Source of the DNA: Pavona decussata | Taxonomy: Eukaryota | Assembly: GCA_977016875.1 (NCBI GenBank) | Contig: CDRNST010000027.1 | Span: 2,914,001-2,978,000 of the forward strand | Direction of reading: 5' to 3' | Length of the DNA stretch: 64,000 nt | In this document: positions 11,335 through 57,277 of the stretch, in pieces | How the letters are laid out: each line of letters begins with the position of its first letter | Position numbering within the stretch: the stretch's first letter is position 1 | Made by a program: the position numbers and the translations under genes | Notes under the pieces: model-generated | Databases searched by the model: none | The model's input: only the letters and a program-made list of their open reading frames with translations | What the model was told of the DNA's origin: nothing

Positions 11335-11344
11335 TTCCAGACGA

Positions 11345-11362: not shown

Positions 11363-11365
11363 CTG

Positions 11366-13711: not shown

Positions 13712-13833
13712 AGAATGATGTATTAATTCAGTGAGTGACACAGGCAAACTTGGAAAAAGGAAATCCGAGTGCAACTATCAGGAGTGGAACCTAAGACCTT
13801 CTGATGACTAGTTCAGATACTCTACCACTGAGC
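13712..13833 (-). mobile_element. tRNA-related SINE-like fragment
   Basis: Minus strand reads GCTCAGTGGTAGAG (A box-like) ... GGTTCCACTCC (B box-like). Same family as the copies at 1-660 and 21222. Confidence 0.7.
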
Positions 13834-30213: not shown

Positions 30214-31092
30214 GTAAGGGCTTACTGGGTTATTTTTCGTTTTTTCTCCTGCCCCAAAACAAACATTTCTCGTTTCTCCGGTTTACCCTTGATGTAAATG
30301 ACCCGCTTCGACCACTTGTGGGAGTTGCGGCTTTCGTCTATAACATGAACATTTCATCTTAAATGATGGATTAGTTTCACAAGGTTTAGTGTACATACGA
30401 TGGGGTGCTATTCATGACCTATATAAGTCCATATAACATAGCTAGAGATTTACACAAAAGCTTGACGTTCTACCCACAAGGCGGCGCGCCAGCAATAAGC
30501 GGTTACCGTCGATCTGCGTTTGCGGTTCGAAACGAAAAATGCAGTTGTGGTTTTCTTGAGATGTTTTGACGTTGCGCCATAATTTCGTTGAAGGAAGTTT
30601 TCGTATTGAAGAATGTGACAGCTATAATTGCACTAAATTCTTCATATTTTGTTAAGTGTAAAAAGCTGGCGGGTAACTAGTTATCAGTCGCCTGTAATAT
30701 AAAAAGACAATAATTGGTTTAGAATTAGGCTAATAATTATAACAGAACGATTTAAAACTTCCAAATAAATACCCGCGTTGAATTTGAAGAACACATCAAG
30801 AGTCTCTCTCGTATACGCGTAAAGAAAATTAAAATGGCGGGAAAATCGTGACAGTGAGTTTATTTTTACCATTCACTTAAAACAGTGGCGCTTTATTCGC
30901 AAACGCGAACGGTAACCAGAAATCTGGAACCCCTCCTCCTCCCCCCAGAGTTTGCTTGACCTGTGTGGCGGAGGAGCGCGAGTACAAGATGCAAAATTCC
31001 TGCGCTGCAAATGACTTGGCGCAGTCAAAAGTCATTCTCTCATTCATTTTGCCACCATAAGTACTCATGGCGATTTCTCGGGTATCTTTCAG

Positions 31093-31418
31093 TTATTAGA
31101 TTCAAAGTTGTCCTTATCGAGAGACTTGAAAACAAAACGATAATACGAGGACGAGTCAGGGAAGTGTTCAAACAAAGTAACGTCACCATCAGCAAGGGCC
31201 GGCGCCGTGTGAAGATTTGGAGCAGCTCCAACTCTACTGGCCCATCCCTTATCTCGGGAAAGTCTTTCTTGATTGGTGGTCACGAGGATGCGTCAAAACG
31301 AAAGCTACTTTTGTCATCAACAAGTTTAATTGTGGCTTGGAGTAAGCAGACTTGTAAAAGGATAAGAAAATGGCAAAAGCAGGGAACAAATGGGGGGAAG
31401 AAAGGAGGAAGAAGGTGA
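31093..31418 (+). CDS. SFRP3/4: sFRP3/4-like exon 3: NTR/C345C (netrin-like) domain
   Basis: tctttcag acceptor, phase 1. VIRFKV...VREVFK...FLIGGHED...LLL...IVAW...IRKW follows the NTR pattern and is strongly basic. The spliced model is 282 aa. Confidence 0.82.
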
Positions 31419-37420: not shown

Positions 37421-38074
37421 ATGGATTTTCAAAACAACGGACCTCTCTCTCCTCCGGTGATTATTACTCCAGAAGTTTCAAGTTATCCCACGAAATTTCG
37501 CGTAAAGAAAATTCAATCTCGGACTTCCTTGGCTACCGATCGATTTTCTTGCATTTCTTTTCTTACCACGAGCTATCAGAGCGATCACTCCGTGTGGATT
37601 CCAAGATGGCGAAGCTTGCCTTGCGATCTCGACGAAGAAATCATCTACGACGATTGCCCCGAGTTTTTAAAAGCTTGGTCGCGATATCGCATAACTAATA
37701 TGGCTCGCCGATACAAGACCATGGATTACATACATATGGTTGTTGACGACAACAAGAGAGAAATATATACCGAATTGGACGGCTGTGGCGATTTGTCTGC
37801 GTCTGTTGGTATCTCAGTGAGTAGAGATTTATTGAACTGCCCTGCGGAATATACCGAAACTGGCTCTGGAATCGTACCGCGGAGCGCATCGGACGAAAAT
37901 ATACAATATTGCGACCACGAAAGCGCCGATAAACAATGGAATTTGACTCAAGTGAATTTGAGTCATGCCTTCCCTTCCTCGCGATCTTGTTCCAGCGAAA
38001 ATCTGACAGCCGACCAGAAAAACTTTAACAGGATCGAGAAGTGGCTGCGACGTTGTAACAGTGGGACAACTTGA
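37421..38074 (+). CDS. Uncharacterised 217-aa protein with C-terminal D-x6-IxxWL-x2-C motif (member 1)
   Basis: Uninterrupted ORF, more GC-rich than its flanks, with gcgATGG start context, upstream TATA/CCAAT and the shared C-terminal motif. Confidence 0.75.
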   Translation: MDFQNNGPLSPPVIITPEVSSYPTKFRVKKIQSRTSLATDRFSCISFLTTSYQSDHSVWIPRWRSLPCDLDEEIIYDDCPEFLKAWSRYRITNMARRYKTMDYIHMVVDDNKREIYTELDGCGDLSASVGISVSRDLLNCPAEYTETGSGIVPRSASDENIQYCDHESADKQWNLTQVNLSHAFPSSRSCSSENLTADQKNFNRIEKWLRRCNSGTT

Positions 38075-41000
38075 GAAGTCTATGTGAAAGCGCCGTTCGG
38101 GTCTCCGAAAACCCAAAGTCTTACGATAGAAACTATTGTGTTATCGTTATAAATACGGCTGTCAAGGCAGCTGTTTGTCTTTTAATCAGAGGAAAATTTT
38201 TTGTTTCACAATCCAATCGTCTTTGAAAAAGCGATCCATATATTTTTTTATGTTGAATGTTTATTATCGTTAAGGCAGACAATTTATTTAAACGGCTGTT
38301 CACAATTTTCGGTAGGACGCTCAGGTTAGAAAAGCCTCTATAATCCCTCTTTTAATTATTATGGATATAGGAAAGTTCAATTTTCTGGCAGTGGCTCTCA
38401 ATCTTTGTGTATTTATTCTCTAACCCGTGCTGCAGGCGACTTTACGTTTTGCGTGGTAAAGATATTCGCTTTGGTAGAAGCACAGGCGAACAACAAAAAC
38501 AAGAAAGTGACATCGATGTTTTAAATTTTCTTCATCAACTTTCTTTGGTTGCTCCGCACTGTTTACCTTACAATTTGCATTTTATTTCACGCTAGCTAGC
38601 GTTGTTTAATTTCTTAAGAGGCTTTGCACCCTATTGAAAGATTAAATTTACAAGTATTCCTACATCAGTGCTACATAAAGAATATTACATGTTTATTTCA
38701 GACAGTTCGTGAATTATTTTAGTAGTGCGAATGTCCGAAGCAATAAAATGCATTGGTGACGTCAAAAGGCAATATAAATGCTGTTTTTGTCTGATTATTC
38801 GTTTCAATATCAGATGCTTCCGGTTAACTGATTAAAAATTGTTGAACAAAGAATATAAGGTATTTTTCCTAGCACAAAACAGGTAGATTTGTAAGGAGAT
38901 GGTATAAAAGTTATGAACCAGAACTTAGGTACTGATGTATCGTTTACACTGCTAGTTCGATTCCCGGCCTCACGTGGATGACCGCATGTCAACCATGATA
39001 TTTCTGCAGCTACAGATATGCCATTTTGCATTTATTTACCGCACGCCTTGGCATATGGGATCTTTTATTTCAAAACTGCTAGTATACGAAGGCACGTTAA
39101 AAATTAACCATTATTATTCAGCATAAGATCAAGAGATTTGTTGCTGGGTTAATAACAACAGTGCGCTAATTGCTGAACTCAAAACTGGTACTGTACTGAC
39201 AGTCAAGTCAACAACAACAGCAAGTTTTATTTGCGTGACTGTAGATTCATACACCATACTCAAAGCGTACATTTGCCGAGTTGAAAAAGAAGGAACATAA
39301 TAATACCAAAATATAGAAAAAATACAAGGGTTCTTCGCCAGGAAGAACAGGGGCAGGGGCACCCACAGCGAGCATCTAAGCAAACTACTTTAAAAAAAAA
39401 AAGAAAAAAAAACTTACTCAGATCGCTTTGTGTCCTATGATCTGTTCGGATGCTTTTTTCTGAAAATTTAGGTATCGGAAAGTTCTACGGAAACGGAATT
39501 TACGAGCTGTTGTTGTTTTTACGAAACCACTATCTGACCTGTTTTCGCATTTTAACTACAAATTTGCCCGTCCAAAAACAAAAGGGATTAGTTTTCCTAG
39601 TGTTACAAAAATACGAGCTGACATTTTGCCGAGGAAAAGTTTAGATTTTCTTTACAACCAAATCCGAATTTCTAAGGCCATTAAGTCCATCCGAACAGAA
39701 ATCCATCCATATGAACCGTTGGGTGATCCTGATGAAGAGTTTATGAACAAGTATAAACTATCTTATCGTAACCAGTATGGTATAAACTAGCTACAATTAA
39801 AGTGGCCGGGTACAACGGTAGAAAACAAAACTGATTAAATTGCTTTAAATGAATTTTATCGCTTCGACTGATAACACCTTTAAATAATCACCAACTTGAG
39901 TTACTGGTTTTGTCTGTTTATTTTTGTTGTTTTTTGTTTTTGATTTTTATTGTATATGTGTTTTAATTATTCAAAATCCGGCACGTTGAATAGTATACTT
40001 TTGGGCAAAACAAGCGATTTATACAAAAATTAACATGAAATTCTTTCATTTTTATTTATTTCAGGTGCTATGTATACACTGACCTGACAATTTGCCTTCC
40101 GAAAGCGAAAATTAAAGTACTTGGCGCACTAAAAATCCATTTGCGGCAAGTGATTGATCACGGTCCTTAACTTGATTATCCGTGCAGGCACTTAAATTTC
40201 CAATTTCGAGTTCAAATATGCTGTTTACCTTTAGGGACCGTTTACATCAACAGCTCTAATGGACTATCAATCAACCTCTTATTCTGTTATTTGCGATCAA
40301 CTGAATGGACTCAAGACAAGGACTGCCAGCTCAACTTTGATGTTGTGACGGTTGTATGAGAGGATGGTAAGATGTAAAAGAACCTATCATTTAATAGGAC
40401 CATTTCAGGACCGCTTCCACTGGGAAGTTTAAGGATATTGTAGGCTTGTAGTGGTGCTTCATTTTAAATGCGATCCCAAGTCACTGACTGTAAACTAGGT
40501 GTAATTTTGTAACGATTTCGCGGCGATTAACTTCTGATTTTGTTGCGAAGATAACCGCATTGGTCATGTGATATACGCACTCCTCCAATAGTACGAAATT
40601 AGAATCAAATCATCGTAATCGCTACTAACCGATCGAAAATAAAATTTCCCGCACGTTAAGGGTTTGTGAACGGCTCTTTTTAAAATGATAACACTACTGA
40701 CTCACTGACTGACTGATTGAGCTGTGGCTTGGCAGAATCGCAAGAACTAAAGTTGAGGACGCTGAGATAGTAGGGAGGAGTGAATATTTTTCTCAGTCCT
40801 CACGGCTTCTTCACTGTCTCGTGTTCTTTACCCTACCGCTGCAACTTAGCGTTTGTATTTAGTTGAATGTTATTTCTTTGTGACCAATGTAAATCGAATA
40901 AAGGTTCTGATAAAAACCCCAAAACTTTGCTGCACTATTCGAACAATAGTGGGAAAGCATATCAACAGCCAAGGTAATTTCAATTGAAACAAATAGTAGT

Positions 41001-43036
41001 TCTAAATATGCGTCTTCCCCTGTCAAGTGCATCACAGACGTGACTGATCGGCTAAAATCGTGACACTATTTTTAATAAGAAGATTTTTTTTCTTTTTCAC
41101 TTAACTGCAAGACATTGTTTAATCAAAGGGATTGACAATAGCCAATAGATCCCTGAAATTTTGATGCTCCAGGGACGTTTTCTCAAAAGATGAAATAAAT
41201 TAACGTAACGATCAATCAGTTGTCCATTTACATTGGCAGTTGTGACTGCAGATTTCGCTCCTAAATTGCGCTTTAGAAATGAACAAACTTGGGCAAAGAA
41301 TTAATATCAACTATTTTCATGCTGGGACACAAAACTGCGAAATAACAGTCACTTGCCATAGAGTTGATTTTCTTGTTAATGGGGATTGCTTATTGCACCG
41401 TAATAAACAGCACGGGAGGAAAGTTTCATTCAGCGAATTTTCACACATGAAAGATTTCATCCACAGACTCAAAATCTAGAGCCACCTTGTATAACACTCA
41501 ATAAACAACACTATTTAGCAGTATTCAACGGGTCACCTGTTCAGACTTCATACACAGACTCAAAAGACATCAGCGTGGTGTTGGACAGTATAAACAGCAC
41601 CACAGGCAAATATTACTGCGCATGCACGAACTGATTACTGGACAGTACCACTAGTACTTCTCGGTTGAGGACAATGTTATCAGTTTGTATTTGTGATCCA
41701 CGGAGATGGTTACATAAAGAGCCAAGTTATTCCATTCAGGCCCTCTTGGAGGAAAAGGTCAAGGACTGATTGGAAATGAACTCAAGATTAAAGAGCGTGA
41801 CTGGGTTAATTCCTGAGACACTAAAGGCATAGTCACTAGGCAATTTGTCTTGGAACTTCTTTGAGCAATTTCTTTGAGCCGTTGCGTATTGCAACATGCA
41901 CATGCCCTGCAATGAACTTGCCTCGCAATGTTTTTCTTTGTTGCAATTACCGTTGAACGAAATAGAACCGACCTCTACTTTTCGCAACGGTTGCGGTACT
42001 GAACAAAAAAAATTTCGAGACATGCTAATTTCATGGCATGTTACACTAAGCAACTAAACGTGCAACTTGAATGAAGTATGCGAAATGAAGTAGGTAAACA
42101 TGACAAGTTTTATAGACACAGTGAATGTAATGTTTAAACATTATTGAACATACCGTCAGAAGCTAAATAACTGTAGTATAAAATCACCCATCTATGCCTT
42201 TTTTATTCGTACAAAAACGTAACCATAGCGAGTCCAAAGACGTCATTAAAGTAAATCGATTGAGTTCATTGTTAGGTACTGAAACGCTCTTCCACTGAAA
42301 CGTGCAGACGACTGACTGAATCCTAATGCTAATACGGTACATATAGTCTGAGCTAAATAAAGAACTTTTCAATCAACCTTTGTGCGTGATATGTCACTAA
42401 TCAAACAATGAATTGATCAATTTGAAAACACAAAGCGTGATGGCTGCGACTGAAAAGCGCTTGAACAACGAGAATGAGGCCACTTTTATAACTTGCGCAA
42501 CAGATCCACTGGTCAGGTCCTGGTCGACCAACTTTCATTTCTGTAAAATAATTATTTATTATTATAAGAATTTATGGGATCTCTCTGAAAAAATTAACTT
42601 GCGACGTGTAGTTCATGTGTAAGTTACATGTTTAAGTAGAAATCAGTGTTGACGCCTGTGAGACTGATTTTCCTGTTCGTTGTTTGCTGTGCCGGTTAAA
42701 AGACCCATTTTGTGAAAGTCTGAAACGGTCTCTGTTTGCGCTCACTTGCGTCACCGTTACTAAAAAGAAAATTGATTAATTTGCATTCAACCGGAATACA
42801 CTTTTTTCTTCATTCGGTAACAAAAATTGCCAATTGACCGAGCTCTTCATCAAGGAGTGGAAGTCATTTTTTTCTTCCAATTTCTGGAGGTTTGGAGCTC
42901 AGAAGAAAATCGCCAAGTTTTTCTTGAAAGGTCAAAGAGAATCGAAGTTACTAAGTGAAAGGTGTCGCACGTATACAAAAACGCTATCTTGGACGGTGGT
43001 GGACTGCAGCAAAATTATTGTAAGCAATCTCTTGGC

Positions 43037-43852
43037 ATGGAAGAAAGCGTTCAAAATAATCCTCCGTTTCTACCAGAATTGTGGCACACGGCAAGAATGA
43101 TCAGCTTTGGAAATGATGGAGGGAAAGCGGCGACTGGAAGTTTTCTAGTAAGTGCGCCATCCACCTGCAGGCCGGAAGCGCAAGGAAAGGTTGTTGCATT
43201 TCGGCGACGAAGGTTAAGAGTTCAATGTCCGCAAGGGTCAAACAAAGTAGAGTTTTGTTTTAATAATGCAGAGATGGCTTCAAAAACTAACAAAATTAAT
43301 CTTCGGGATGACAAAAATCGTCGCACAAGGGAAATCTCTGTTGACGATTTTCCAGTCAACGTTACCGCAGGTAGAGAGGTGTTAAAGTGGGTAACTCAGG
43401 CTAATGGTGGAGCTGAAGAAGAAAAATGTGCACGTGAAGTGAATAAAGCAGACGAAGAAGATTACGGAAGCGAAGGTACGAAAAGAGAAGACGGATGTTC
43501 TGTTGATTTATCCGCCGTTAGCAACGTGGGACTGACTTCTTCCGTCACAAAAAGGCTGACCAATAGGAAGCAACTAAAGTCTTTCATGGAACTTGACGCT
43601 TCACTCTCACATCATGTTTTTACTGACACTCACTTGGAGAAAATTAACAAGGAAAAACAAAGACCAAGTCCCAGTTTTCTTGACAGCTTTGAGAGGGGAC
43701 TGGGAAGTAACGTAAACTTTTGCCGCCAAAGAATGCAGATGACTGAGAGCCTCGCGCGGAATCCCTGTACGAATCTTGATATAACAAAGAAAGCTATGAT
43801 TAACAACTGGCTTATTGATGTTGCTATAGAGAGAGGTAGATGCACCGAATAG
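43037..43852 (+). CDS. Uncharacterised ~271-aa protein with C-terminal D-x6-IxxWL-x2-V motif (member 2)
   Basis: Long ORF with ggcATGG start context (alternative ATG at 43097), charged disordered composition and the shared motif. Confidence 0.72.
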   Translation: MEESVQNNPPFLPELWHTARMISFGNDGGKAATGSFLVSAPSTCRPEAQGKVVAFRRRRLRVQCPQGSNKVEFCFNNAEMASKTNKINLRDDKNRRTREISVDDFPVNVTAGREVLKWVTQANGGAEEEKCAREVNKADEEDYGSEGTKREDGCSVDLSAVSNVGLTSSVTKRLTNRKQLKSFMELDASLSHHVFTDTHLEKINKEKQRPSPSFLDSFERGLGSNVNFCRQRMQMTESLARNPCTNLDITKKAMINNWLIDVAIERGRCTE

Positions 43853-44540
43853 CTTTGAGAGTTTGAGAGGTACTAATTTCCAAATGAGTCTATTTTGTTT
43901 TTAAGAAGACAACCCATACGTTTGCTTGACTGATTTTCAAAATGGCATAGACATATATACCATCCCGGATCATTCAAACCCGCTAAGATGTCTGAATAGT
44001 GGAGTTATGGTGACTATTAATAATTTATCACTATTAAAAAGGCTGGTGACGTGAATCAAAAATTGACACAATGAAAGTGTAAGGCTAAAAGTTTATAGTT
44101 TTGATTTTTTTTTTCGTTGAGCTACTGATCGTTTCCAAGACAACATGACTATTAATAAACCAGGCCAAAGAAATGGGTTTTGTTTTGTTTGTAGAAAATT
44201 CTTTTATTAGATTCGTATACGTCATTTGTCTGTTATCAACGTATAAAAATGCTCTTGCGTTTACACTGTCGTCTCCTTTAATTTCAACATACCATTTTTT
44301 CGTAAATTGTTCTATTTTTGTTCCAAGATATTAAAACTTCCTTTGAGTTTTTATTTTATTTTATTTTATTTAATAGCAACATACAGTGCACAATCGTGCG
44401 GAGCATAAGGGAAAGTAATAAATAATACAAAATAAGAGGGTAACAGAAAACATTACAAGCACAGTAAGGTACATATTGGCAAAGCTAAATATTGGATCCT
44501 GCTCACTAACAGTGATCGGCGCTGACTTAATAATTAATAA

Positions 44541-46430
44541 GGTGGTCTTCCACTCAAAATTTGAAAAATTTCCCTGTTGGTTGGCACAAATTCTTTTTGT
44601 ACCAATGGTCAGATCATCACTTGGTGATACAAGTGATTGGTGATGACAACTTTGATTGACATTCTGTTGGTATGGTAACCATGCCACGGACCCCAACAGT
44701 GAAAATAGTGGTACTGGCCTCGGAAAGGATATCTCTGAAAGGTATTGAACGTTTTGAGATGAACGAAACATTAATATAAAGTACAATAATAGTTCTATAC
44801 CGTGAACCTTTTAAACCCAATATTTTTAATGTTTGTAGTACTTTATCTAGCTACTTTTTTCTCAGTTTTGGAAAAATTAAAGGCTTCAAGATACTTAATG
44901 AATAAAACGAGAGTGATAAGAGGAGATATCAAGACTTTTTTTAGCTTCCCAGCATGAAACTACATTATGAGAAACAACTGTGAAAGTTCGGTGTGAATCA
45001 GGGAAATAATTTATGAGATATTCTTCAGAGCATTTTGCTTTAAAGTTTCAGAATAGGCTACGCCCTCTTTTTGTTGTGCCTTATCAGTTATTCTCTTCCT
45101 TTTTCCTCAAAGCAATCTTGTTCTTGTCTTGTTTTATGGACGTTTCTTATAGAGTTTGCTTTTGCCACTCAAATTCTGTCAGAATGTTAACAGCCAGTCA
45201 TACAAAACTCTCCAGGAGAGATTCCAAGCTTGTCAAATACGTTGGTACAAGCCTGGAATCCAATGTTAATAAGGGCTATACAGCGTCATAAATGCCCAGC
45301 TGTAGTACTTCGGCACCCACAAAAACACCTTTAGGTACGCGCTCCCAAAACATTCCATTAAGGCCTCATTTCGGTTTTGAGTTTTGCCATCTAGACATCA
45401 GCTACTAATGAAAGTCATCCTCACTCAACTTGGCATAAATAGGTTTTCGTTCAACAATTATGTCTAAGGGCAATCAATTAAATTCAATTCAATTTTATTT
45501 ACACTTATTCAACTGAAATACAATATATTTTTATAGTAAAAAAATAGACATGCAGAGCATTGTATTTAAGTGATTTTACCTTCTAGGAAAGAAGTGAGTA
45601 GTGGCCAAAGGAGCAAGACTTTCGTTTTGGCCACTACCTCTGTGCACTTACAAAAATGGGGGGAAGTAGAATTTATAAAACTGTTTGTAGAGCTCTGTTA
45701 ATTAAATTAGGCTTGGGAGAGGAAAATACATCAGTAAGGGAAAAAGTGTTTACAGTAAATAGATAAGTATATAGTGTAAGTTAAATTAATATATATTATT
45801 CATGTTTGGCTGTACATGTCAAGTAGCAAAAGTTTGTCTTATAGCAACAGGTTTGAAACAATTGGTTCTGTTGGCTCTGTCCCACATAAACCCACACAGT
45901 CAAGCTGTCTGCTCCTCCTGGGCAATATTACAAGTGCAAACTCCTATCTGCTGAGGAGGCACAACTGAGCGCATAACATATCGAACTGTTAACCTGAAAG
46001 GTACGATTATGTTGAGAAGAGGTGAAGAAATCTTTTTTCCAATCACATGAGGGACAAAACAAACGGAGGCTTGACGCACATCCCTTCGGGTTGGCAGTCT
46101 GCTCTTGCAAAACTAAGCAGCATTCGAAGCACTCCCTGTAAGGAAAAGCCTTCGTATTAACAAACCTAAATACGCTGGTTCGTGCACTCTTCTCACAATC
46201 GTTATTTTTAAGCTTTTTGGTCCCTTTACTAGAGAACATTTTCCCGGCAGAAGCAGAATTACTCGTGTCTTTCTAAATCGAGGGGCCAATCACTCGTGCC
46301 AGTAGTCTTGTTTTCCTGTTAAGAATGCCGATTTCCATAAAATTCGCGTTCCTTTGGGTAACCAGTGCGGGCTTTAGGTAAACCGAACAAAAACGACAAA
46401 TAATGAAGCTGAAGTTCCCAAAGTTCAACA
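44541..46430 (-). mobile_element. Decayed DDE DNA transposon (Kolobok- or Mutator-like transposase remnants), internally deleted and interrupted
   Basis: Minus-strand fragments in order: LPKARTGYPKEREFYGNR (~46330-46385), CFEC..KGCASSLRLFCPSCDW..FFTS..FQVN (~45985-46140), and CLDGKTQNRNEAL..WERVPK.VFVG..LGIYDAV (~45280-45400), with frameshifts and stops. Candidate terminus (a)taa|ggtggtc at 44541. Confidence 0.7.
45475..45830 (-). mobile_element. Probable LINE 3' end inserted into the transposon remnant
   Basis: (ttcaa)n-type tail next to ttttattt (AATAAA on minus) and a hairpin gtagtggccaaa...tttggccactac. Confidence 0.45.
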
Positions 46431-46855
46431 CGCGTTATAAACACCTTCAAAACGGGTCTTAAATGCGTTCAAAACGAGTTCAAAACCAAACGCGTCAAAA
46501 ACGCGTTTAATACGCGTTCAAACCGCGTCCAAAACGCGTTCAAAGCGCGTAAAAAACGCGTTCAAAACGCGACTTTGAACGCGTTCAAAAGGCGTTCCAA
46601 GTTCGTTCAAAACGCGTTCCAAACACGTTTAAAACGCGTTTTGAAAGCGTTTTAAACGCGTTCGGAATGCGTTCTAAACTCGTTTAAAACGCGTTCAAAA
46701 AGCCTTCCATAACGCGTTTGAAACACGTTCTAAACGCGTTTTAAACGCGTTCTCAATGGGTTTTTTGGAACGTGTTCCAAACGCGTTTAAAACGCTATTA
46801 AAACGCATTCAAAACGCAATTCAAACGCGTTCCAAACGCGTTCAAGATGCGTATC
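46430..46855. repeat. CpG-rich short-period satellite (~11-bp unit built on AACGCGTT)
   Basis: Dozens of degenerate aaaacgcgttc units in both orientations. Confidence 0.9.
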
Positions 46856-46863
46856 GTATCTTT

Positions 46864-47058
46864 GAGAATTGGTTCATGCTTAGTGTGCGTATATCGAGTT
46901 ATGGATGCACGAGGGAAGTTGGGAGAGCACGAGAGAAGCGTAAGAGTTACTCGAGGCGTAGCCGAGAGCAACTCTAGCTTCTTGAGTGCTCTCCAAACTT
47001 CCCAAGTGCATCTATAACTCGATAAACGCGCAGCTAAAAGTATGAACCAATTCTTTTA
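46864..47058. mobile_element. Fold-back (hairpin) repeat element
   Basis: agaattggttcat...tatcgagttat.gatgcac...ggaagtt.gg.agagcac pairs with gtgctctccaaacttcc...gtgcatc.ataactcgata...atgaaccaattct. Confidence 0.75.
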
Positions 47059-49568
47059 TAACATAGTAAAGATAAAGAAAATGATTCCTGGAAAACAGGT
47101 TTCGTTCCTAATTAATTACAAATTCTCTGTGCAAAAAAAAAAGGTGAAAGTAGTTTCTCATGGTTTAATCTTAACGTTTCATTAAACTTCGACAAGCTCT
47201 TATAAATATACATTTTTTTTGGTGTTGTCTCTCCGTAAAAGTTTTTTATAACACAGCGCGCGCATGCTTCTCCATCTGACTTGCACACGTCATCGGATGG
47301 ACGCACGGCCGTGCGTATGTTGAGAAATGGACCATAATGACGCCAATAGGAGTAAGATTAGGATGTACGCGCGCTATGTTATATAAGAAGTTCACACTTC
47401 TTATCTAAGAATTACGTAGGGACTAAATCAGTCTACTTGCAGAACCCTTACTTAATGAAAAGTAGGATTTTAAAAAATACGTAANNNNNNNNNNNNNNNN
47501 NNNNNNNNNNNNNNNNNNNNNNNNNNNNNNNNNNNNNNNNNNNNNNNNNNNNNNNNNNNNNNNNNNNNNNNNNNNNNNNNNNNNNNNNNNNNNNNNNNNN
47601 NNNNNNNNNNNNNAATGACTGTATGTAGTTCCTTCGATGTACTCTGTGTTTGGTTCCCTGCGTTTTCCCCTCTTTTCTTAATCAACGGGTTTGAAATATC
47701 AAGAATATGATTATTATTAGAATAATGATTCTCCTTTTCCCTTTTCATCTCTTTTTCTGTTGTAATGTTAATGATAATAAAAATTATATTAAATTTACTT
47801 TAATTTTGTTGCATACCCTTTTCTAAATCTGCGTTGTTATGTAAAAGTTAAGTTTCTTATTCCTTCTTTTCCGTTTTTCCAGCATGTTTTGTAATTTATT
47901 GTAATTTTTTTTTTCCATTATGTTCTCCTACTCGTCTTGTCTACTCGACTAGCTTTGGGGCTATTTGCGGGACAACCAAAATTGNNNNNNNNNNNNNNNN
48001 NNNNNNNNNNNNNNNNNNNNNNNNNNNNNNNNNNNNNNNNNNNNNNNNNNNNNNNNNNNNNNNNNNNNNNNNNNNNNNNNNNNNNNNNNNNNNNNNNNNN
48101 NNNNNNNNNNNNNNNGTGGCCAAGACTCATTTCATCCTCTTTCCTTGCAGTAATTCTATGGCAATCTTTCGGAGTGGGACTTAAAGGGAAAGTTCATGGG
48201 AATTTGGTGTTATATCAAAAACTCCAAAACGTTTTTTTATCAACAGAAACCTAAAAGTACATTACTCAAATGTGTTGTAGATTGCCACAACAGTGTACTT
48301 AGACTATCGACAAGTGTCTCTGGCCACAGATGCACTGGGTCAGAATGGATTGCGACTTGAAATAAGTCAGGTTAATACTTTGAAATTCTCGCGTTTCTTA
48401 GTTTTCAAAATGTACTAGAGCATGTCATTGTTCCTTTCAAGAATTCAGCTGATTTCTTTTTCTTGATGTTCTAGAATTATTTTGTAACTTAGTGAAGGTG
48501 TTGTCGCACCATTTTTACCACAAAAGGTGAAAATCCCCGTGATACTTTCCCTTGAAGAAAAAGAATGTTGAAAACAGAGGAGGTTTTTAGCTGGCTAAAA
48601 CGTACCATGTTCACTCCTTTCACTTGAATGATAACATGCTAGCGGTTAGAGAGTTGAAGAGCTCGAGAGAGTGGCACTTTATATGATTGCTTTCTGTTTA
48701 CAAACTTTACAGAGATTGAAGAAACTCTCTGGTCATCGCAAAAGATCATTCTCTTGGTCATCGCTAATGTTACCACGTCAGGTTGCTGACATATTATTTA
48801 TCTAGAGAACTTTCTAGCCTTTCAATTCCTAATCGGTAAGAATCAAGTCAGCGACGAAGTGCTTCCGGCGGGACTCAAAGATAGTTCTTTATTGCCCGCC
48901 CTATAGTCCTAAACACGCCAAAATGTTTAAACATTCGTTATTAATAACAATTTTGCTTTCCATTCGGCAGTAAAACCTGAACCTAGTTAAGAAATTTTTA
49001 ATTCGTTTGAATATAACTTTTCTGACTGAGAATCAATGGTCTTTGTAACTGGAAAAAAAATCAAGGCTCCTGCGCTATAAACCTCGTCACTTTTATATAG
49101 ATGTGCTTACAATATAAGTATTTCCTAGGGTAACAGTGTGTTCGTGTGTGTTCTGCGCATTCCACAAGAGGTATGTCAAGAAAAAAACTCCGCTTTTAGG
49201 AGGATTAACTTAATCACCTTGCACCGTCAGGTGATATTTATTTCAATTGTCAAGCCCGCAGCATTTTCTTCTTTCTTTTTCCGATGATCGCTAAAAACGA
49301 TGTATCGGTGCTATTTACACGCATCATATTATCCTATGACGAAGTCCAGACGGGAGTTCTATCGGACTTATTCCGCAATCCGCTTTCTCGATAAAAATAT
49401 ATCTGATGGACTGGTTGGTGTATTGCACAGCTTTCATGTTCATTCATAAGGCGAGAAAGACTTAGAAACTTTATTGCACGTTATCTCTCTCCTCTCCTGA
49501 GTGGGTACATACTGCTAGGGCAACTGTGCTAGGGACTGAACCCTTCGATGGACTGGCATCCCATCCAG

Positions 49569-49803
49569 GGACCCGTTTCTCGAAAGTCCCGGTAACTTAC
49601 TGGGCCCGATAAGTATATTTTTAAACGTTTTTTCGCCGATTACACAGTGATTACAGACATGGTTCTTGGGCAGGGATTCATTAAACTACAAGATTTTAAA
49701 ATTTAGTATTCAAAGCTAACAAAAATTGACTTTTATGAAGAAACATTTATTACAAAGACACTTACCGGCCCGGTAAGTTACGGGACTTTCGAGAAACGGG
49801 CCC
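49569..49803. mobile_element. Harbinger-type MITE B (copy 2)
   Basis: Closely similar to 34600-34839, with CAG on both flanks. Inserted in a SINE-like 3' segment (gatggactggcatcccatccag|ggggg). Confidence 0.88.
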
Positions 49804-52800
49804 CAGGGGGGAATTGTTAGCGAGATTTCTAGTCAGTTAATGCTAGACCGGATGGGTCACGTACGCTCGAAGTCCAACTACGCGCGAAGAGTACTACAAT
49901 AGATCAAAAGCAAGCGGACAAGAAGTTATCACCCCTTGACGCACATTATTCCTAAAAAACATTTCGCCCTGTTCAGGCCCGGGCGGTAAAAATCTTTACT
50001 CTTTATTACACACATAGAGAAATAATTCTCCGTTTCGCACCAAAATGGCTCAAAATTCGAAAACCCCCCACCACACCCTGTAGCTGGTATAGAGGATACC
50101 CTGTCTTTATAGATGGTTCCCGCGCAGTTCAACCCCCTCAACTCCCTCTACCCGCCCCAAAACCTTTGGTAAAGAATTTAATCAAAAGTAGCTTTAACAG
50201 TCTGGAGCGTAAATGTATTCTAGTGTTGATAAACATAAGATTAACGCTATAAAATTTCATACGTGTTGCATTGGGAACTCCAGTAACATTAAACCTTGAA
50301 CAAAAAAAAGGCTTATAAATGGTCAACGAAACAGAGTCATTACAAATGTTTCGAATAGAACTGAGGAATGACGACTTATAAATGTTCAACATTTTCCAGA
50401 AGAGGATGCTGCAAGATCCCTTTACAAGAATGGAAATCTTATGGGCTTACCGTTAGAGCCCCTCCAGTTAAAAATGCCTTCCTATGTGCTAGTTATCATA
50501 CGTGTTGTATACCATTAATCCTCAGCTAAAACAACAACAAAGAAAAAACATTGGTTTAATAATCTTTGACAACAATTAATAAGGATTAAATTGAAGGCTT
50601 ACACTTTTTCCCACTTTGTTCCACCTTAATTAAACCACATTTTTCTCTGACTTGAGCTCTGGCAATCGTCTTTGGAACAATGGTTCGCTTTTGTAACTTC
50701 AAGTACTGGCACCGCTGCTTTTCCATATTGCCTGGGGGATAACCTACTGGTGCTGTCAATGTATTACATATGCATGTGGTAGGCCATAAAGAAGAGTGGG
50801 AAAAATCAGCGTTGAGATTGCGGGATTGTGTGCTGGAATCTCCGGCAGCTATAAGTTAAATTTTCAGCAAATTTCAGCTGTCAGTTTAAATTTAGCCATT
50901 TCTCAGGGATATCTGGTTGATCGGCTTTTCCGAGTTCAAACTAGCGGTCCTTCTCAACTGATTGTTAATCACAATCCTCAGACATCAGTTTAACCCCATC
51001 GAGACCCTCATTTTTCAACAAGATTGTGTTTGTTATGTGTTAATGCAAAACTGATCCAAAACTGGGAATAAAACGTAGCTCAATAGTAGATCTTTTCCCG
51101 CCTGTTCGCCTCTAGGCCGAGGGCAGCTAAGACAGCTAAAATTGCAGTAAATTTATGCCAGATTTTACGGCCGACTTTGAACCTATCAGTAACTCCGCTC
51201 AAAACTGACAGGTCAAGTCCAAAATCTAAAATTATGCCTCTCAGTTATACCTGAATAGAACACCGCACATTAAAATCATAGACCCGTACAGCGCTCGTAA
51301 ACCATGATTAGAAATCTTCTAAATGTCGCCACATTTTGATTAGAAGAGTTTGTAAGCTAAGTTTTTTTAAATTTCGTGTTTGACACTGGTTTATAGCCCG
51401 AGTCTGTTTTCTATACGTTTGTAATCTCATGAGGGCGATTACCCTTTGAGCCCCACATATAATGAGTCCCTTCCTCTTTCAGCATTGATTTTCCCCTTCC
51501 CTTTTTCTAGTTTTCTTCCTATACTTAGTTGGAGAGTGCGTCCAGATGAACGTACTTTGCACGTCCTCGTGCAATACGGCAATCATTGTCGTGATTCCGA
51601 GGAAGCCTCGTCGTGTCATATGTGCGTGTGCTCTTCGAAACTGCTCTAATCGCGTGCAAACTAAGGAAAATAAAACATCTGGTGCAGTTGAAATGAAAGA
51701 AGTTATTAGTTTTTTATCCTTTATCATTGAGCTCAGGTATCAAAAAAAAAAAAAAAAAACTCACCAGAACCCGGCAGGGAGTACTCAGTAATCCTTTTAG
51801 TGGAATTAAAGATAAGGTTACAGAAAAGGTTTTCTGCTTTTTGTCGGTTAATTTCGTTAGAAAAACGTCCCGTTTATTATGTCCTCACTGATGTATCTTG
51901 TACTAAGGGTCCGGCTTGTTTGGACTTTAAAATTATACCTTATCCAAGGTACTATTTCAGCGACTTAAAATACAAAAGTTTTTAGTTTCTTCATAACAGA
52001 GAGATTCTAAGTCCATTCGTATGGGGATGGCCCTGGAAACGAAAATTTCAATTCTTTAGGACGCACGGTGTACACCAACACGGGAAAAGCAGATCATAGC
52101 AAGGGCTACTGAAATCCAAAGAGAAACTTGGCGGTAAACCACGCATTTTTCAGGGATAAATAAGCTTCAATTTGGAAAAATTCCATAGATTCATTGGGTT
52201 CCCTGTGTGCATACCACTGGACTGTTCACAGCCAATGATCAATCGAAACAGTTCTGTCATAACATTAGAAGTCGTTTCCGGGTCTTTCGTTTTGGAATAC
52301 GTTCAACAAGGAATTTTACATAGGTTAATCGAGTTTTAGCAACATTCAAATGCTGTCTCCTGTTTCAGTTAGCCCACTTAATTCCTAAGTTTTGGTAACT
52401 GAACATCAAATTGGAGTGTAGTTACTTTATCTAGTTTGCTGGCTCTTGAGAAACGAAACATTGAACTGTTCAAAATGTGTAATTTTGGAAAGAAATATTG
52501 TTATAAGACATGAAGCAGTTACCTGTGACACAAAACTGACAAAGATGTGTAAAGATGAAAGCCGAAGAGATATTATGATAACCTGCAAAATTAAATTTGG
52601 TGTGTTGGAGAATCGATTCAGCTCTCAATTCCGCGCAGCCCATAGCTTCATATGCCCTTCTAGTCTGCATACTTCCTCCTTTCTCCCTGCGATTTTACGC
52701 TTTTTTTCGAACAAATGTACTGATGGCGCAGGATACTGAAACAGTCATAATCACATCTCCACGATGATTTTTATTTTTAGGGGAAAAATGGGAGGGCGGG

Positions 52801-53250
52801 GTTCAACGAGAACTTCCTTCCGGCTGGATATCTTTACTGAATAAAGAGCTTATCATCGGGGGATTAAGAACGCCATTGTTCCCACAGCTCGATCAAAATC
52901 GAACGTTTTATCGCTTTTATTGTTTTAATGTTTGTCGTGCAAAGGTCGCTTTCTGCTTCGAGATAGTTCTCTTCTTTTTTTTTTTTTTTATGATGATCAA
53001 AACGTGCGTTCCAACAGATAAAAATCCAAACCTTGTCCTTTTTCACTTACATAATCAGAGAGGTCTTGCCTCAGAGATCTTTCTTTCTCAAAAGTCACTT
53101 CAAACGCCAGGCCACGTCGTGAAAGACGTTTAAAGATATCGTTCCGCCGTTGAATTATCAATGTTGGTCCGTTTCTGTAGCTGATAAAAAAGTTCTATCG
53201 CCTCCTCAGTCTGTTTTGCAAACACAAGAAAAGCTTGCCCAGTTCTTCAA

Positions 53251-53686
53251 CCCGGGGGGTGGTGGGGGACCGGGGGAAGGTACTCCCATGGGCCATACAG
53301 GTATGTGCAGCCCCAAAGGGCACGGTTTTTCAACCGTTCTGGTCATAAATGGGGCATCGATTGAAGCCTTTTTGCCACCATTTTGGTAATAAATAGGGTA
53401 TCAATTTTTGCACCCTAGTCTTAAATGCGTTTTTTAAGAAGAAGCTACTTCTTCATAGTGATATTTACGGCAACTGTGTACGTGCCGTAACGGCTTGTCA
53501 CGCCTTTAACAATGGCCTGAACTAGGGGAATAATTATAAAGCAGGTCTGAAACAGGGTATTGATTTAAGGGTCAGGACATAAATAGGGTAGGGAAAATCG
53601 CAGATTTTGGTCATAAAGAGGGTAAGGGCTTTGGGAAACTGGCCGCACACCCTTACCCCGTGATTTTCCTAGGAGTACCCCCCGGG
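53251..53686. mobile_element. Non-autonomous TIR element with CCCGGGGGG termini
   Basis: cccgggggg...gtactcc and ggagtaccccccggg inverted ends, with internal (aaat)agggta subrepeats. Confidence 0.7.
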
Positions 53687-56422
53687 CTCTTCCGGGTTCT
53701 ACTTCTCACACTTCTGTTGCTTGTCTCTCAAGGCATGATGCCTTCTCTTCGATAAATACTAACATCGTTTGCTTAAGAGTGTCAAGTGAAGAAAACTCAA
53801 GTATCATGTCAGTTGTTTAAATTTTGGTTTGACTCTAGTTAGCTTCGTCAGTTATTCCAAGAAAAGATGTACTCATTGCCGTGATAACAGCAGAATCTTA
53901 GGTAGTTGTATTACTCTGTTACTGGCTCTGAGATGCACAGACACTTTGAGTATTGTGCACAGGCGCAGTAACAAATTGCATGGCAGCAAGCTCTTACATT
54001 ATGACTATTTTTGTCAAACTGATTCCAGTCTGCGCTACAATTTTTTTTTATTTTTAATCTCGTTAATTATCGAAGACACTTGACTTCAAAAGTCCAGTGC
54101 TAACCATGTTCTCACTGATCAAGCTAGAGAGTGTGAACTGACAAAGACCATGAAATAAGAGGAAGCCTTGCATGTATGCATTTCGTTCGTTTAACCCTTA
54201 CCGGCAAATTGAAACCGTTCACATCTTTTGCAATATTTAATAAAAATAAGGTAGTACCTTATGAAGGTCTGCTCACCAGATTTCGTTCCGTTTTGGTTGG
54301 TACTTGTTCTTTCACACCATTCAAGTGTTAAACATCTTGCTCCGTCATAGTAGGGTACTATGCTCAGTGCTGAGCTTCATTTGAATTGTCACACTTTAGG
54401 ATTTCAGTTCACAGACTCAATAGTTAGAACCACCTTACCACATAGAAGTGCAAATTCGGATTCCCGTATGAAAGCTGAGGGAACAATCACTAGAAATGTT
54501 GAACACTAAAATCTACGTTGCTCGAGATGGGTAAAACCCAGAGGTACTATTTCGTATGAAAAATGATAACATTAACTGGGTTGTCTTGAACACGAATGAG
54601 TAAGTCTTCTTCTTTACGGCAAACCTTAACTCGTATAAAATGGGGTTGAGGGATACGTTAGGTTCTGTCCAAGATGACGAGCTACAGTTCAGAGAAAAAG
54701 AGGTTCCCCCTGTTCACGGTTATTTCAACACACTCGGTAACACTGCCCAAATATGGTCATGGTGCACTGAATATTCATCGTCCGTAGTCAACCGATAGCC
54801 TGCGATGTACGTAATTTCGACTGTCGGGGAGAAAAATGGCAAAATAAAGATCGTCTCCAGCATTCTGCCATAAAACTGTTGTTTGTTATCAATGTGTTGA
54901 ATAAAACAATTTTTCTGCTCTATCAGTGCGGAATATCTCCTGATTTTAGCCCACTCCGCCTACGGCCTCATCAGCTAAGCATCAGGTGCGCGATTTCGCA
55001 TGATTTTTTTTTTTGAATTGTAGTAAAGTGCACAGACCAGTTCATTCTCTCAAGCCTTTTTCACTACTACAATTTCGCGTGCTTCACGAGTTAATTAAAA
55101 CCAGAAGCTCCTTCATATTGAGTATTATCCCACTAACAATCGATTAAAATACACAATGAATTAACAATGATTCTAAACATTTATTTCCGTAAAGGCAAGA
55201 TTTTTGAGCTTAACCACAATCGTTACTGAACTCATGCTAAAACTAAACCTTACACACACTTTTGATATTTCGATATGTACAGTCAACCACAATAACGCCT
55301 TGTTTGAAAAAACACATCGCACGCAACAATCGATGAGAGTTTGACCTTCTTTTCTTAATAAAAGGTAAATGTTTTAAGACCACCCAGCAAAGGAAATGCT
55401 TTGAGAAAGACAGCTCTGTCCTGTTGTGGGCAGAAAACAAACAAACAAACGCCTACATCTCGATAGCGCGCGGGCGAGATATAATAACTTAGCGGAGAGC
55501 AGAGGCCACTTCCTTTGTCTATACTAATTGCTGAACATGTAAGCTAACATACTAAGATGGAAATGAAATTTTACGGAAATCACACTTTTTCTTGTGTTTC
55601 GGACGTAACAATATAATTTTGAACACCTTACATAATTAGAGTACAAACAGCTTGTCTTTTTCTTGATCAATCTTCGACGCCGGTGCGTGAAGATGAAAAT
55701 TGTTGGCGGAAACTATCGGTCTCGAGCAGGCGCAGACATTTTCTCTACCAGGGAAGAAATAAAGAAACTATTTGTAGTCTTCACAGAGTTTAAAATACTG
55801 ATCTCATACCATGCCCCGTCCTCGTACCAGCCGCAGGGGTGAATATAGCGTGAGTAAAGTTCGGATTTTTAAATCGGACCATTTACACGTTGCATCACGA
55901 TCTATGAATGCAAGCGCCAAGCGGTGGGAAGAATAGACCTTAATCCACTTGACTTCTCCATATCTAGCTTGCTTCGTTGCATATCGTATTCAGATCAGAA
56001 AAGATTATTTCAAGGAACCAAACTAAATCCACGAGATCTGTCTGTAGCGGTTTAATTTGACCCTATACATTTTTTTTGTGGTCTACTTGATTTTCTAAGA
56101 ATTGTATCGGAAAATGACTGAGTTTTCTATACGTCTTAGCCATTCTCTACGTTTTCAAACCAACACATGGAGTCTTTGCTTGATTCAGTTTTAAAGCTCA
56201 AAGTTCGGAATGCAGCTAATTTAGAGGAGCTCTATTCTATTCACTAGGGTGATGACAAAGCCATAAAAAGTCTATTCTTCCTAACAACTTTGACGCGTTA
56301 TATAAATATACTTAACGACAGAAACCGAGTGTTCATATCCTGCTGGATGCCGACGGCACGCACATAGAGACCTTTTATTTACAGATAAATTTCCTGAATA
56401 CTTTTGTTTTGCAAGCCAGCTG

Positions 56423-57277
56423 TTATGTAACTTTGGCTTTTTCGCACTCTTTTAACCAGTTACAGATCATGGAGACCTTTTCTGGATCCTGCTCCTCCTC
56501 GTCTTCATCAAAAACTTGATTCACGTCTTCTATCTCCTCTAAATTTTCGTCAAACGGCGACCGCGCGCGTTCAGACTCGTCCACCGCCTTTTCCCGTCTG
56601 ATGACTGCGGATTTTGTGCGGTTTCGAAAAGGGGAACCGTTTATGTCACTTAATCCATTTGTAAGGGCAGAACACGTTTTAATCACAGGTAGAGAATTCG
56701 TCTTTCGAAGAATCTTTCCATTTGCCAGGTTTAGCGTAACGAACGCCTTTCTCGCCCCAGACTCGAGAAGTAGTTGGCTGTCACAATCGATTGGGCGGGA
56801 AAAGCCCCCATTGGAAACGTTTCCGCTAAACGCAGTTTTAACTTCTCCAGACGACTTTCTAAAGAAATCCTCCGAATGACTCGGCGGTTTTTGTAATGGA
56901 GGCAAAGACGTTGCTGAAAGCATTTTAGGTAGCGTCTGACCCCCTTTCTGTGCTTCCAAGACTTCGAGAAAATGCTCTGAAGGTCTTCTCACGCGGAAGC
57001 TTTGCGCGGAGTTTTCCCGAATATCGCAATTTGCCGGTGGCGTGAATGGCGGTGTGAGGCATCTTTCGGACAGACTTGTTTCGTACTTCAAGCTTGAAAC
57101 GCTCCTCGATGAAGCAGATGACAAGCGTTCTCTTTTGCCTAAAGCGTTCGTGATTTCCTTATCGCCATCCGCTTGTTCAATAGCGTGAGCTTCAAAGTTC
57201 AAAATCGTGGGAGGTGATATCTTACGTCGCAATGGAAGTAAGCTATTCTCTGAGTTGTACATTGGGGTTTCCCTCAT
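56423..57277 (-). CDS. Uncharacterised ~284-aa Ser/Arg/Pro-rich protein with C-terminal D-x6-IxxWL-x2-C motif (member 3)
   Basis: Long ORF with first ATG (aaaATG) at 57277. A strong acceptor ttttctttcgttatcag| lies at 57355, so an N-terminal extension is possible. An acidic run precedes the shared motif. Confidence 0.78.
   Translation of the reverse strand: MRETPMYNSENSLLPLRRKISPPTILNFEAHAIEQADGDKEITNALGKRERLSSASSRSVSSLKYETSLSERCLTPPFTPPANCDIRENSAQSFRVRRPSEHFLEVLEAQKGGQTLPKMLSATSLPPLQKPPSHSEDFFRKSSGEVKTAFSGNVSNGGFSRPIDCDSQLLLESGARKAFVTLNLANGKILRKTNSLPVIKTCSALTNGLSDINGSPFRNRTKSAVIRREKAVDESERARSPFDENLEEIEDVNQVFDEDEEEQDPEKVSMICNWLKECEKAKVT

What the first reader, a model, noticed from the sequence alone, without database searches (positions are those of the whole stretch)
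37421..57277. Three clustered orphan genes sharing only a C-terminal D-x6-I-x2-W-L-x2-[CV] helix
Seen: the three long non-transposon ORFs in this 20 kb end in ADQKNFNRIEKWLRRC, LDITKKAMINNWLIDV and QDPEKVSMICNWLKEC. D, I, W and L align without gaps, each within about 10 residues of the stop. The rest of the proteins show no alignment I can see. All have uninterrupted CDSs of 217-284 aa with polar, disorder-like composition. Inference: this is an old tandem family of disordered adaptor or inhibitor proteins in which only a docking helix is conserved, and they may compete for one partner. From memory the motif resembles the KIxxWLxxC segment of ITPRID2/TESPA1 and the RIIKWL tail of FAM110, but this is unverified.
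Basis: partly seen in the sequence, partly recalled or inferred. Interest (0 to 1): 0.82.

Follow-up and report, generated by a model that had tools for sequence, protein, structure and literature searches.

The report
Coral gene trio sharing tail helix
Three neighbouring, uncharacterised coral genes encode mostly disordered proteins whose only shared feature is a short, strictly conserved helix (I-x-x-W-L) at the very end. The trio keeps its order in a distant relative, so the helix probably docks all three onto one still unknown partner.

Summary
Three uninterrupted ORFs (37421-38074 +, 43037-43852 +, 56423-57277 -) end in I-x2-W-L-x2-[C/V], 10-14 residues from the stop. The assembly gaps are intergenic.

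What supports a real, shared tail:
- Each gene has orthologues in which I, W and L never change. This holds even where the rest has drifted to 21-32% identity.
- Synonymous codons vary in the tail, so selection acts on the protein.
- Profile-profile comparison of the three families gives tail-versus-tail as the only hit each time (E 0.013-0.05).
- The same order and orientation recur within 8 kb in a distant hexacoral.
- AlphaFold2 predicts disorder, with the tail helix as the most confident element.

What needs correcting:
- The genes are not orphans. ORF1 reaches Nematostella and an octocoral cluster that includes a Xenia protein.
- Each family has further conserved blocks of its own, including 14-3-3-type R-x-x-S-L-P sites.
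- Pfam does not support the ITPRID, TESPA1 or FAM110 resemblance.
- Leave-one-family-out tail profiles do not recover the third gene genome-wide, so cross-family similarity is only about five residues.

Best reading: an old tandem trio of phospho-regulated disordered adaptors with a common docking helix. The partner is unknown. Moderately interesting, undescribed family.

The parts
37421..38074 (+). ORF1, single-exon CDS of 217 aa. The oldest and slowest-evolving member, found across Anthozoa.
   Evidence: ORF. There are 21 homologues including Nematostella (45% id), plus distant relatives whose cluster includes a Xenia protein. dN/dS is 0.09. It is single copy in the genome. No Pfam hit.
38009..38059 (+). 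ORF1 tail helix ADQKNFNRIEKWLRRCN (residues 197-213).
   Evidence: I205, W208 and C212 are invariant in 20 sequences, and L is F only in the octocoral-like rows. AlphaFold2 predicts helix 197-213, the best-scoring part of the model with block pLDDT 63-74. Translation checked.
37601..37621 (+). ORF1 PRWRSLP, an invariant block that fits the 14-3-3 mode-I consensus (R-aromatic-basic-S-L-P).
   Evidence: P61-P67 are invariant in alignment A2 and rank among the top conserved windows. The 14-3-3 reading is inferred from the published consensus and was not tested.
43037..43852 (+). ORF2, single-exon CDS of 271 aa. The fastest-evolving member.
   Evidence: ORF. Only 4 word-search homologues. Positional orthologues in L009 and L010 are 21-22% identical. 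hmmsearch gives E 2.7e-8 and 1e-4 for a one-sequence search space. dN/dS is 0.5-0.7 between close species.
43781..43822 (+). ORF2 tail ITKKAMINNWLIDV (residues 249-262).
   Evidence: K251, I255, N256, W258, L259, D261 and V262 are invariant in 6 sequences. This is the most conserved 12-residue block of the family.
56423..57277 (-). ORF3, single-exon CDS of 284 aa, convergent with ORF2.
   Evidence: ORF. 35 homologues including Acropora millepora LOC114948459 at 56% id. The L010 orthologue is 30% identical by tblastn, E 5.8e-8. dN/dS is 0.2-0.3. It is single copy.
56438..56485 (-). ORF3 tail helix PEKVSMICNWLKECEK (residues 265-280).
   Evidence: K267, M270, I271, W274, L275, K276, C278 and E279 are invariant in 18 sequences. 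AlphaFold2 predicts helix 265-280 with block pLDDT 74-93.
56954..56989 (-). ORF3 RRPSEHFLEVLE, the most conserved block of the family: a basophilic-kinase-type site followed by a short helix.
   Evidence: Nearly invariant, also in the 29%-identical L010 orthologue. It is the top conserved window, 0.97. AlphaFold2 predicts helix 101-109. ORF2's RPSPSFLDSFER (43661-43696) is the best BLASTP match to it but is not significant, E 0.81.
56687..56710 (-). ORF3 LRKTNSLP, which fits the 14-3-3 mode-II and AMPK/SIK-type consensus (L-R-x-x-x-S-L-P).
   Evidence: L190, S195, L196, P197 and I199 are invariant. It is the third most conserved window. The function is inferred from the consensus only.
47485..48115 (.). 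Two assembly gaps (47485-47613 and 47985-48115) in the ORF2-ORF3 intergenic region.
   Evidence: N runs were located. No ORF of the trio touches them. The flanks are collinear with the related contig L008. The gap letters were not looked up.

Best explanation
The locus holds three linked, single-exon genes found only in anthozoans. Each encodes a mostly disordered protein that ends in the same three-turn amphipathic helix: hydrophobic-x2-I-x2-W-L-x2-C/V, with hydrophobic positions 1, 4, 7/8 and 11. Shown: the helix is the only element common to the three families. It is under protein-level purifying selection. The gene order ORF1(+), ORF2(+), ORF3(-) is old. Inferred: ORF1 is the Anthozoa-wide, slowly evolving member, and ORF2 and ORF3 arose from an ORF1-like gene by tandem duplication followed by fast, unequal divergence that spared the tail. 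The narrow hydrophobic stripe of the helix suggests it docks each protein onto one common, unidentified partner. The disordered bodies carry family-specific short motifs. These include invariant R-x-x-S sites that fit 14-3-3 binding (PRWRSLP in ORF1, LRKTNSLP in ORF3) and RRPSEHFLEVLE. On this reading the three proteins are phospho-regulated adaptors or competitors at one site.
For: The ORFs and tails are real. I, W and L are invariant within each family while the rest falls to 21-32% identity. The tail is the top conserved block in the ORF2 family and the second in ORF3. I, L and C codons vary synonymously among species. dN/dS is below 1 for all three genes. hhalign between the family profiles gives one hit each time, always tail against tail (E 0.013, 0.035, 0.052). 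The composition-based chance is about 7e-7. L010 has the same order and orientation within 8 kb, with tails KIERWLQRC, VMINKWLSDV and GMIREWLKEC. L009 has ORF1 plus ORF2. AlphaFold2 gives mean pLDDT 45 and 51, with the tail helices as the best parts, up to 93. A combined tail profile finds only these three genes in the 602-Mb genome below E 1e-5. ORF1 relatives in Nematostella and in the octocoral cluster that includes a Xenia protein keep KIERWLFRC and KINKWFQRC.
Against: Cross-family similarity rests on about five residues. Pairwise BLASTP is not significant. The hhalign probabilities are low. Tail profiles built from two families do not recover the third genome-wide at E<=10. Common descent is therefore argued from position, linkage and conservation, not from sequence statistics alone. 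No partner is known. The complex test of ORF3 tail with ORF1 tail gave no verdict. In ORF1 the tail is only middling in conservation. Nematostella and Xenia show ORF1 alone within 10 kb on either side. I found no direct expression evidence, because the Logan contigs are collinear with the genome.
Confidence: 0.5

Rival explanations
1. The tail is a targeting signal, not a partner-docking helix. It could be an in-plane membrane or lipid-binding amphipathic helix, perhaps with an S-acylated cysteine, or a class-3-type nuclear export signal (hydrophobic-x2-hydrophobic-x3-hydrophobic-x2-hydrophobic).
For: The helix is amphipathic and C-terminal. The Cys three residues after WL is invariant in the ORF1 and ORF3 families. 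F/M-x2-I-x3-L-x2-C fits the class-3 NES spacing, from the published consensus as I recall it.
Against: ORF2 has Val in place of Cys, so the position looks like a hydrophobic contact and not an acylation site. The hydrophobic stripe is narrow, with charged residues elsewhere, which is more typical of protein-protein helices. The invariant W is not one of the NES anchor positions. NES-like patterns are common by chance.
Confidence: 0.2
2. The three genes are unrelated neighbours, and the shared I-x2-W-L arose by convergence or chance. There is no common ancestry.
For: There is no significant similarity outside the tail. Leave-one-family-out profiles fail genome-wide. Short frames elsewhere in the genome carry MINRWLSDV at chance-level E-values.
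Against: All three are adjacent, single-exon, disordered and of similar size, and all carry the motif at the same distance from the C-terminus. Chance is about 7e-7. The motif is invariant in each family over long divergence. The cluster is conserved in L010. Even convergence would imply a shared function for the tail.
Confidence: 0.15
3. They are divergent members of the ITPRID/KRAP/TESPA1 or FAM110 families.
For: ESM Atlas lists an arthropod KRAP_IP3R_bind cluster at cosine 0.78 for ORF1, which is below the level that counts as more than a lead.
Against: There is no Pfam hit at E<=10 for the three proteins or for 34 homologues. The coral has its own KRAP_IP3R_bind exon on another contig at 48 bits. 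The three family profiles do not match that exon. No IxxWL-type frame lies within 50 kb upstream of it.
Confidence: 0.03

Closest known systems
Intrinsically disordered adaptors or regulators built from short linear motifs plus one docking helix (general class; for example AKAP-type amphipathic helices that bind a dimerisation/docking domain)
   Same: The proteins are mostly disordered, with one short, confidently predicted amphipathic helix that is conserved while the rest drifts. Paired hydrophobics occur one turn apart (MI..WL) in ORF2 and ORF3.
   Different: The AKAP consensus is not met: ORF1 has R/K where a hydrophobic residue is required, and W is atypical. No RIIa/DPY-30-type partner is known here. 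The motif I-x2-W-L-x2-C/V matched no Pfam family and no solved chain better than chance.
ITPRID2 (KRAP) / TESPA1 / ITPRID1 family (Pfam PF14722, PF14723)
   Same: Only a recalled KIxxWLxxC-like segment and a weak ESM Atlas lead at 0.78.
   Different: The KRAP_IP3R_bind and SSFA2_C domains were not detected. The genome's KRAP-domain gene lies on another contig and does not match these families.
14-3-3 client phosphoproteins
   Same: Invariant PRWRSLP (ORF1) and LRKTNSLP (ORF3) fit the mode-I and mode-II consensus, alongside several other invariant R-x-x-S sites.
   Different: This is a consensus match only. ORF2 lacks such a site, and it says nothing about the shared tail.
RefSeq 'uncharacterized protein' entries LOC114948459 (Acropora millepora), LOC5504086 (Nematostella vectensis) and LOC124453739 (Xenia sp.)
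   Same: LOC114948459 and LOC5504086 are the orthologues of ORF3 and ORF1. LOC124453739 (P0081) belongs to the same 90% cluster as the distant ORF1 relative P0061.

Membership tests
ITPRID/KRAP/TESPA1 | KRAP_IP3R_bind domain (PF14722) | tested here: not met
   No hit at E<=10 for the three proteins or for the 17+17 homologues. The genome's PF14722 exon is at C28:934565-934720. hhalign of the three family profiles against it found nothing.
ITPRID/KRAP/TESPA1 | SSFA2_C domain (PF14723) | tested here: not met
   No Pfam hit.
   No ITPRID protein sequence was available from a tool. A scan of 50 kb upstream of the coral KRAP exon found no convincing frame.
FAM110 | FAM110 N- or C-terminal Pfam domains | tested here: not met
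   No Pfam hit at E<=10. HMMER filters would miss a motif-only resemblance.
INKA/FAM212 | FAM212 domain (PF15342) | tested here: not met
   It was the top ESM Atlas lead at 0.83 with 166 shared features, below the reliable range. No Pfam hit.
14-3-3 clients | R-x-x-pS-x-P type site, phosphorylated and bound by 14-3-3 | tested here: inconclusive
   The consensus is present and invariant in ORF1 and ORF3. Phosphorylation and binding cannot be tested here.
AKAP-type RII-binding helix | Hydrophobic pairs at i/i+1, i+4/i+5 and i+8, with small aliphatic residues | tested here: not met
   By inspection of alignment A7, ORF1 has R/K at the first pair position and all three have W in the second pair.
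One paralogous family ORF1/ORF2/ORF3 | Significant similarity between the family profiles | tested here: inconclusive
   The only hhalign hit in each pair is tail against tail, with E 0.013-0.052. Leave-one-out tail profiles fail genome-wide.
One paralogous family ORF1/ORF2/ORF3 | Conserved linkage and orientation | tested here: met
   L010 carries all three in the same order and strands within 8 kb. L009 carries ORF1 plus ORF2.

The most novel reading that the evidence does not exclude
The I-x2-W-L-x2-C/V tail is an undescribed, anthozoan-specific docking module. Three co-located, phospho-regulated disordered proteins use it to compete for, or assemble on, one cellular hub, and the cluster is kept together because their dosage must be co-regulated.
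Probability: 0.3. Interest if true: 0.6.

Novelty: new variant of a known kind. Interest (0 to 1): 0.4.

Why it matters
Corals and sea anemones carry many conserved genes of unknown function. Here three of them are tied together by linkage and by one small, invariant helix. That gives a concrete handle for experiments: a 15-residue peptide with a W-to-A control can be used to fish for the partner. It is also a clean example of tandem duplicates that diverge beyond recognition while one short motif is kept, a pattern that ordinary homology searches miss. It does not overturn anything known, and without a partner its biological weight is open.

Tried and rejected
- **Pfam scans.** The three proteins and 34 homologues gave nothing consistent.
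- **ESM Atlas.** Only sub-threshold leads: FAM212 0.83, MACIR 0.78, KRAP 0.78.
- **PDB profile search with the tail.** Chance-level hits only, E about 1.
- **Big HMM search with the ORF1 family against 1.84 billion representatives.** Eight hits, all the family itself, octocoral-like relatives, fragments or a repeat protein. No bilaterian relative.
- **Own-genome searches with the full-length ORF1 and ORF3 profiles (A2, A1).** Self only.
- **Leave-one-family-out tail profiles.** The third family was not recovered.
- **hhalign with alternative alignments.** The N-terminal SPP and mid-protein F-L motifs do not reach significance.
- **Complex prediction, ORF3 residues 235-284 with ORF1 residues 170-217.** No verdict (score 0.02). 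This counts neither for nor against binding.
- **Search for a KIxxWL exon upstream of the coral KRAP-domain exon.** Nothing convincing within 50 kb.
- **Logan contigs as transcript evidence.** Collinear with the genome, so uninformative.
- **Literature searches on the RefSeq locus names.** No papers.
- **Taxon names for the ENA contigs L008-L011 and L033.** None available.
- **ORF2 near a 45%-identical ORF3 orthologue (L033).** None within 10 kb, which is uninformative because the window spacing is 12.5 kb.
- **Other motif readings considered and rejected by inspection.** PP1 RVxF, calcineurin PxIxIT, B56 LxxIxE, MDM2-type FxxxWxxL, eh1, and the W-acidic or Arp2/3 acidic-W motifs. A LIR reading (FSMI after an acidic run) fits ORF3 only.
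Full report
**1. What is there**

The window is eukaryotic DNA of about 39% GC, part of contig C27 of a 602-Mb assembly. Its best protein matches are stony-coral and sea-anemone sequences.

Between 37 and 58 kb there are exactly three long ORFs.

| Gene | Coordinates | Length | Tail |
|---|---|---|---|
| ORF1 | 37421-38074 (+) | 217 aa | ...NRIEKWLRRC... |
| ORF2 | 43037-43852 (+) | 271 aa | ...AMINNWLIDV... |
| ORF3 | 56423-57277 (-) | 284 aa | ...SMICNWLKEC... |

The tail W lies 10-14 residues from the stop. The flagged assembly gaps (47485-47613 and 47985-48115) are in the ORF2-ORF3 spacer and touch no ORF. A related coral contig, L008, is collinear with the window on both sides of the gaps. 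I did not look up or fill the gap letters. No sequence handled here looked human.

**2. Are the genes real?**

Yes, on comparative grounds.

- **ORF3** has 35 homologues down to 44% identity. These include Acropora millepora LOC114948459, and the same 90% cluster holds A. palmata and A. muricata entries.
- **ORF1** has 21 homologues, including Nematostella vectensis LOC5504086 at 45%.
  - A profile search of 1.84 billion representatives adds only distant relatives, P0061, P0062 and P0065. P0061's 90% cluster includes the Xenia protein LOC124453739. Nothing outside Anthozoa was found.
- **ORF2** evolves fastest. The word search found four homologues. Positional orthologues in L009 and L010 are 21-22% identical.
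- **dN/dS** against close relatives is 0.09 for ORF1, 0.2-0.3 for ORF3 and 0.5-0.7 for ORF2.
- **Gene structure.** The ORF1 (A2) and ORF3 (A1) profiles find only themselves in the genome, and the tail profiles find ORF2's tail only at its own locus. In the orthologous loci inspected (Nematostella, Acropora, Xenia and unnamed ENA contigs), the called gene is the same single ORF.
- **Expression.** I found no direct evidence. The Logan contigs are simply collinear with the genome.

So the genes are not orphans. They are taxon-restricted, unnamed genes with no Pfam domain.

**3. Is the tail special?**

Within each family, I, W and L never vary.

- **ORF1 family (20 rows):** I205, W208 and C212 are invariant. 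L is replaced by F only in the octocoral-like rows.
- **ORF3 family (18 rows):** K267, M270, I271, W274, L275, K276, C278 and E279 are invariant, also in the 29%-identical L010 orthologue.
- **ORF2 family (6 rows):** K..MIN.WL.DV is almost the only invariant block.

By sliding 12-residue windows, the tail is the most conserved block in ORF2, the second in ORF3, and middling in ORF1. The codons for I, L and C change synonymously between species, so selection acts on the protein and not on a DNA element.

AlphaFold2 with the family alignments predicts disorder: mean pLDDT is 45 for ORF1 and 51 for ORF3. The tail helices are the most confident elements (ORF1 residues 197-213, block pLDDT 63-74; ORF3 residues 265-280, 74-93).

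**4. Do the three belong together?**

Sequence statistics alone are weak.

- Pairwise BLASTP is not significant.
- Profile-profile comparison gives a single hit for each pair, and it is always tail against tail, with E 0.013, 0.035 and 0.052. Secondary alignments are noise.
- Tail profiles built from two families do not retrieve the third across the genome at E<=10.
- A profile built from all three finds only these three genes below E 1e-5. That test is circular.

The stronger arguments are position and linkage.

- The composition-based chance that two neighbours share I..WL in their last 22 residues with a first gene is about 7e-7.
- A distant hexacoral contig, L010, carries all three in the same order and orientation within 8 kb. 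Its ORF1 is 47% identical, about as far as Nematostella, though its tree placement is unsure because of a long branch. Its tails are KIERWLQRC, VMINKWLSDV and GMIREWLKEC.
- L009 has ORF1 followed by ORF2. It also has the NTR exon of the upstream neighbour.
- Nematostella and Xenia show ORF1 alone within 10 kb on either side.

I read this as ORF1 being ancestral, with ORF2 and ORF3 as old tandem derivatives that diverged quickly. This is an inference. Convergent gain of the tail is not excluded.

**5. What else do the proteins contain?**

Each family has its own invariant short blocks.

- **ORF1:** SLATDRFSC.SF, PRWRSLP, RRYKTMDYI and SVSRD.
- **ORF3:** LLPLRRKISPP, RERLFSASS, RRPSEHFLEVLE (predicted helix 101-109), LPPL and LRKTNSLP.

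PRWRSLP and LRKTNSLP fit the published 14-3-3 mode-I and mode-II consensus. Several blocks are R-x-x-S sites of the basophilic-kinase type. These functional readings are inferences from consensus only.

Two further resemblances are suggestive but not significant: SPP[VT]I[IL] near the N-terminus of ORF1 and ORF3, and P-x-x-F-L-x-x-hydrophobic in all three.

**6. Mechanism**

The tail places hydrophobic residues at positions 1, 4, 7/8 and 11 of a three-turn helix, with charged residues elsewhere. In ORF2 the Cys position is Val.

This narrow stripe is what a helix that packs into a groove of another protein looks like. My best explanation is therefore a common docking helix on three phospho-regulated disordered adaptors, confidence about 0.5. 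A targeting role (membrane or acylation, or a nuclear export signal) is the main rival.

The partner is unknown. One complex prediction of the ORF3 tail with the ORF1 tail returned no verdict and is not evidence either way.

**7. Comparison with known families**

- ITPRID/KRAP/TESPA1, FAM110 and INKA are not supported. There are no Pfam hits for 37 sequences.
- The coral's own KRAP_IP3R_bind exon lies on another contig and does not match the three profiles.
- ESM Atlas scores are below the level that means more than a lead.
- A motif-only resemblance to an ITPRID N-terminal segment could not be tested, because no tool gave me such a sequence and I did not type one from memory.
- PDB holds nothing better than chance.

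**8. Verdict**

The family and its tail motif are undescribed, but the general kind, disordered proteins with a conserved docking helix, is familiar. I rate the interest as moderate.

The sFRP-like neighbour was searched exon by exon by reference.

Noticed in passing
window 26912-27427 (+) and 30963-31418 (+): Two exons of a secreted frizzled-related-protein-like gene lie upstream of ORF1. One has an Fz domain (E 4.5e-22) and one an NTR module (E 6.1e-11). The NTR exon is also found upstream of the ORF1 orthologue in L009, so synteny extends to this neighbour. The exons were searched separately and not joined.
   Followed up: partly
window 6108-11406 (-): A BEL/Pao-type LTR retrotransposon in a GC-rich stretch (about 0.50). 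Its domains are DUF1759, RVT_1, Peptidase_A17, integrase zinc-binding, rve and DUF5641.
   Followed up: partly
window 11753-12481 (-): An ORF with the acidic C-terminal region of sodium channel modifier 1 (SCNM1_acidic, E 2.3e-19).
   Followed up: no
window 13770-13841 (-): Rfam tRNA match just above the gathering score (30.6 against 29 bits). ARAGORN found no tRNA, so it is possibly a tRNA-derived repeat.
   Followed up: no
G000:C120:2720001-2770000 (L027-L031): A tandem array of at least seven open frames of about 650 aa. The one scanned has Mab-21 nucleotidyltransferase and Mab-21_C domains (cGAS-like). Three antisense frames of 33-40 aa between them read ...K[KE][MT]INRWLSD[VA]SPVHTLID, which resembles the ORF2 tail. 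The E-values are chance-level (0.1-0.9) and the copies are not independent.
   Followed up: partly
window 43337-43411, ORF2 residues ~101-125: ORF2 has an internal segment, SVDDFPVNVTAGREVLKWVTQANGG, that aligns weakly with ORF1's tail region, SSENLTADQKNFNRIEKWLRRCNSG. This was the top ORF1-ORF2 BLASTP hit (E 0.75); hmmsearch gave E 0.004 for a one-sequence search space. ORF2 might contain a second, degenerate copy of the tail unit.
   Followed up: no
L006 17198-20705 (Nematostella): The downstream neighbour of the Nematostella ORF1 orthologue is a PTEN-like phosphatase gene (DSPc, PTEN_C2). No counterpart was seen in the window.
   Followed up: no
L008 1432-5154: In the closely related coral contig, a LINE-type element (Exo_endo_phos, RVT_1, zf-RVT) lies about 5 kb upstream of the ORF2 orthologue. 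No match to it was seen in the window.
   Followed up: no
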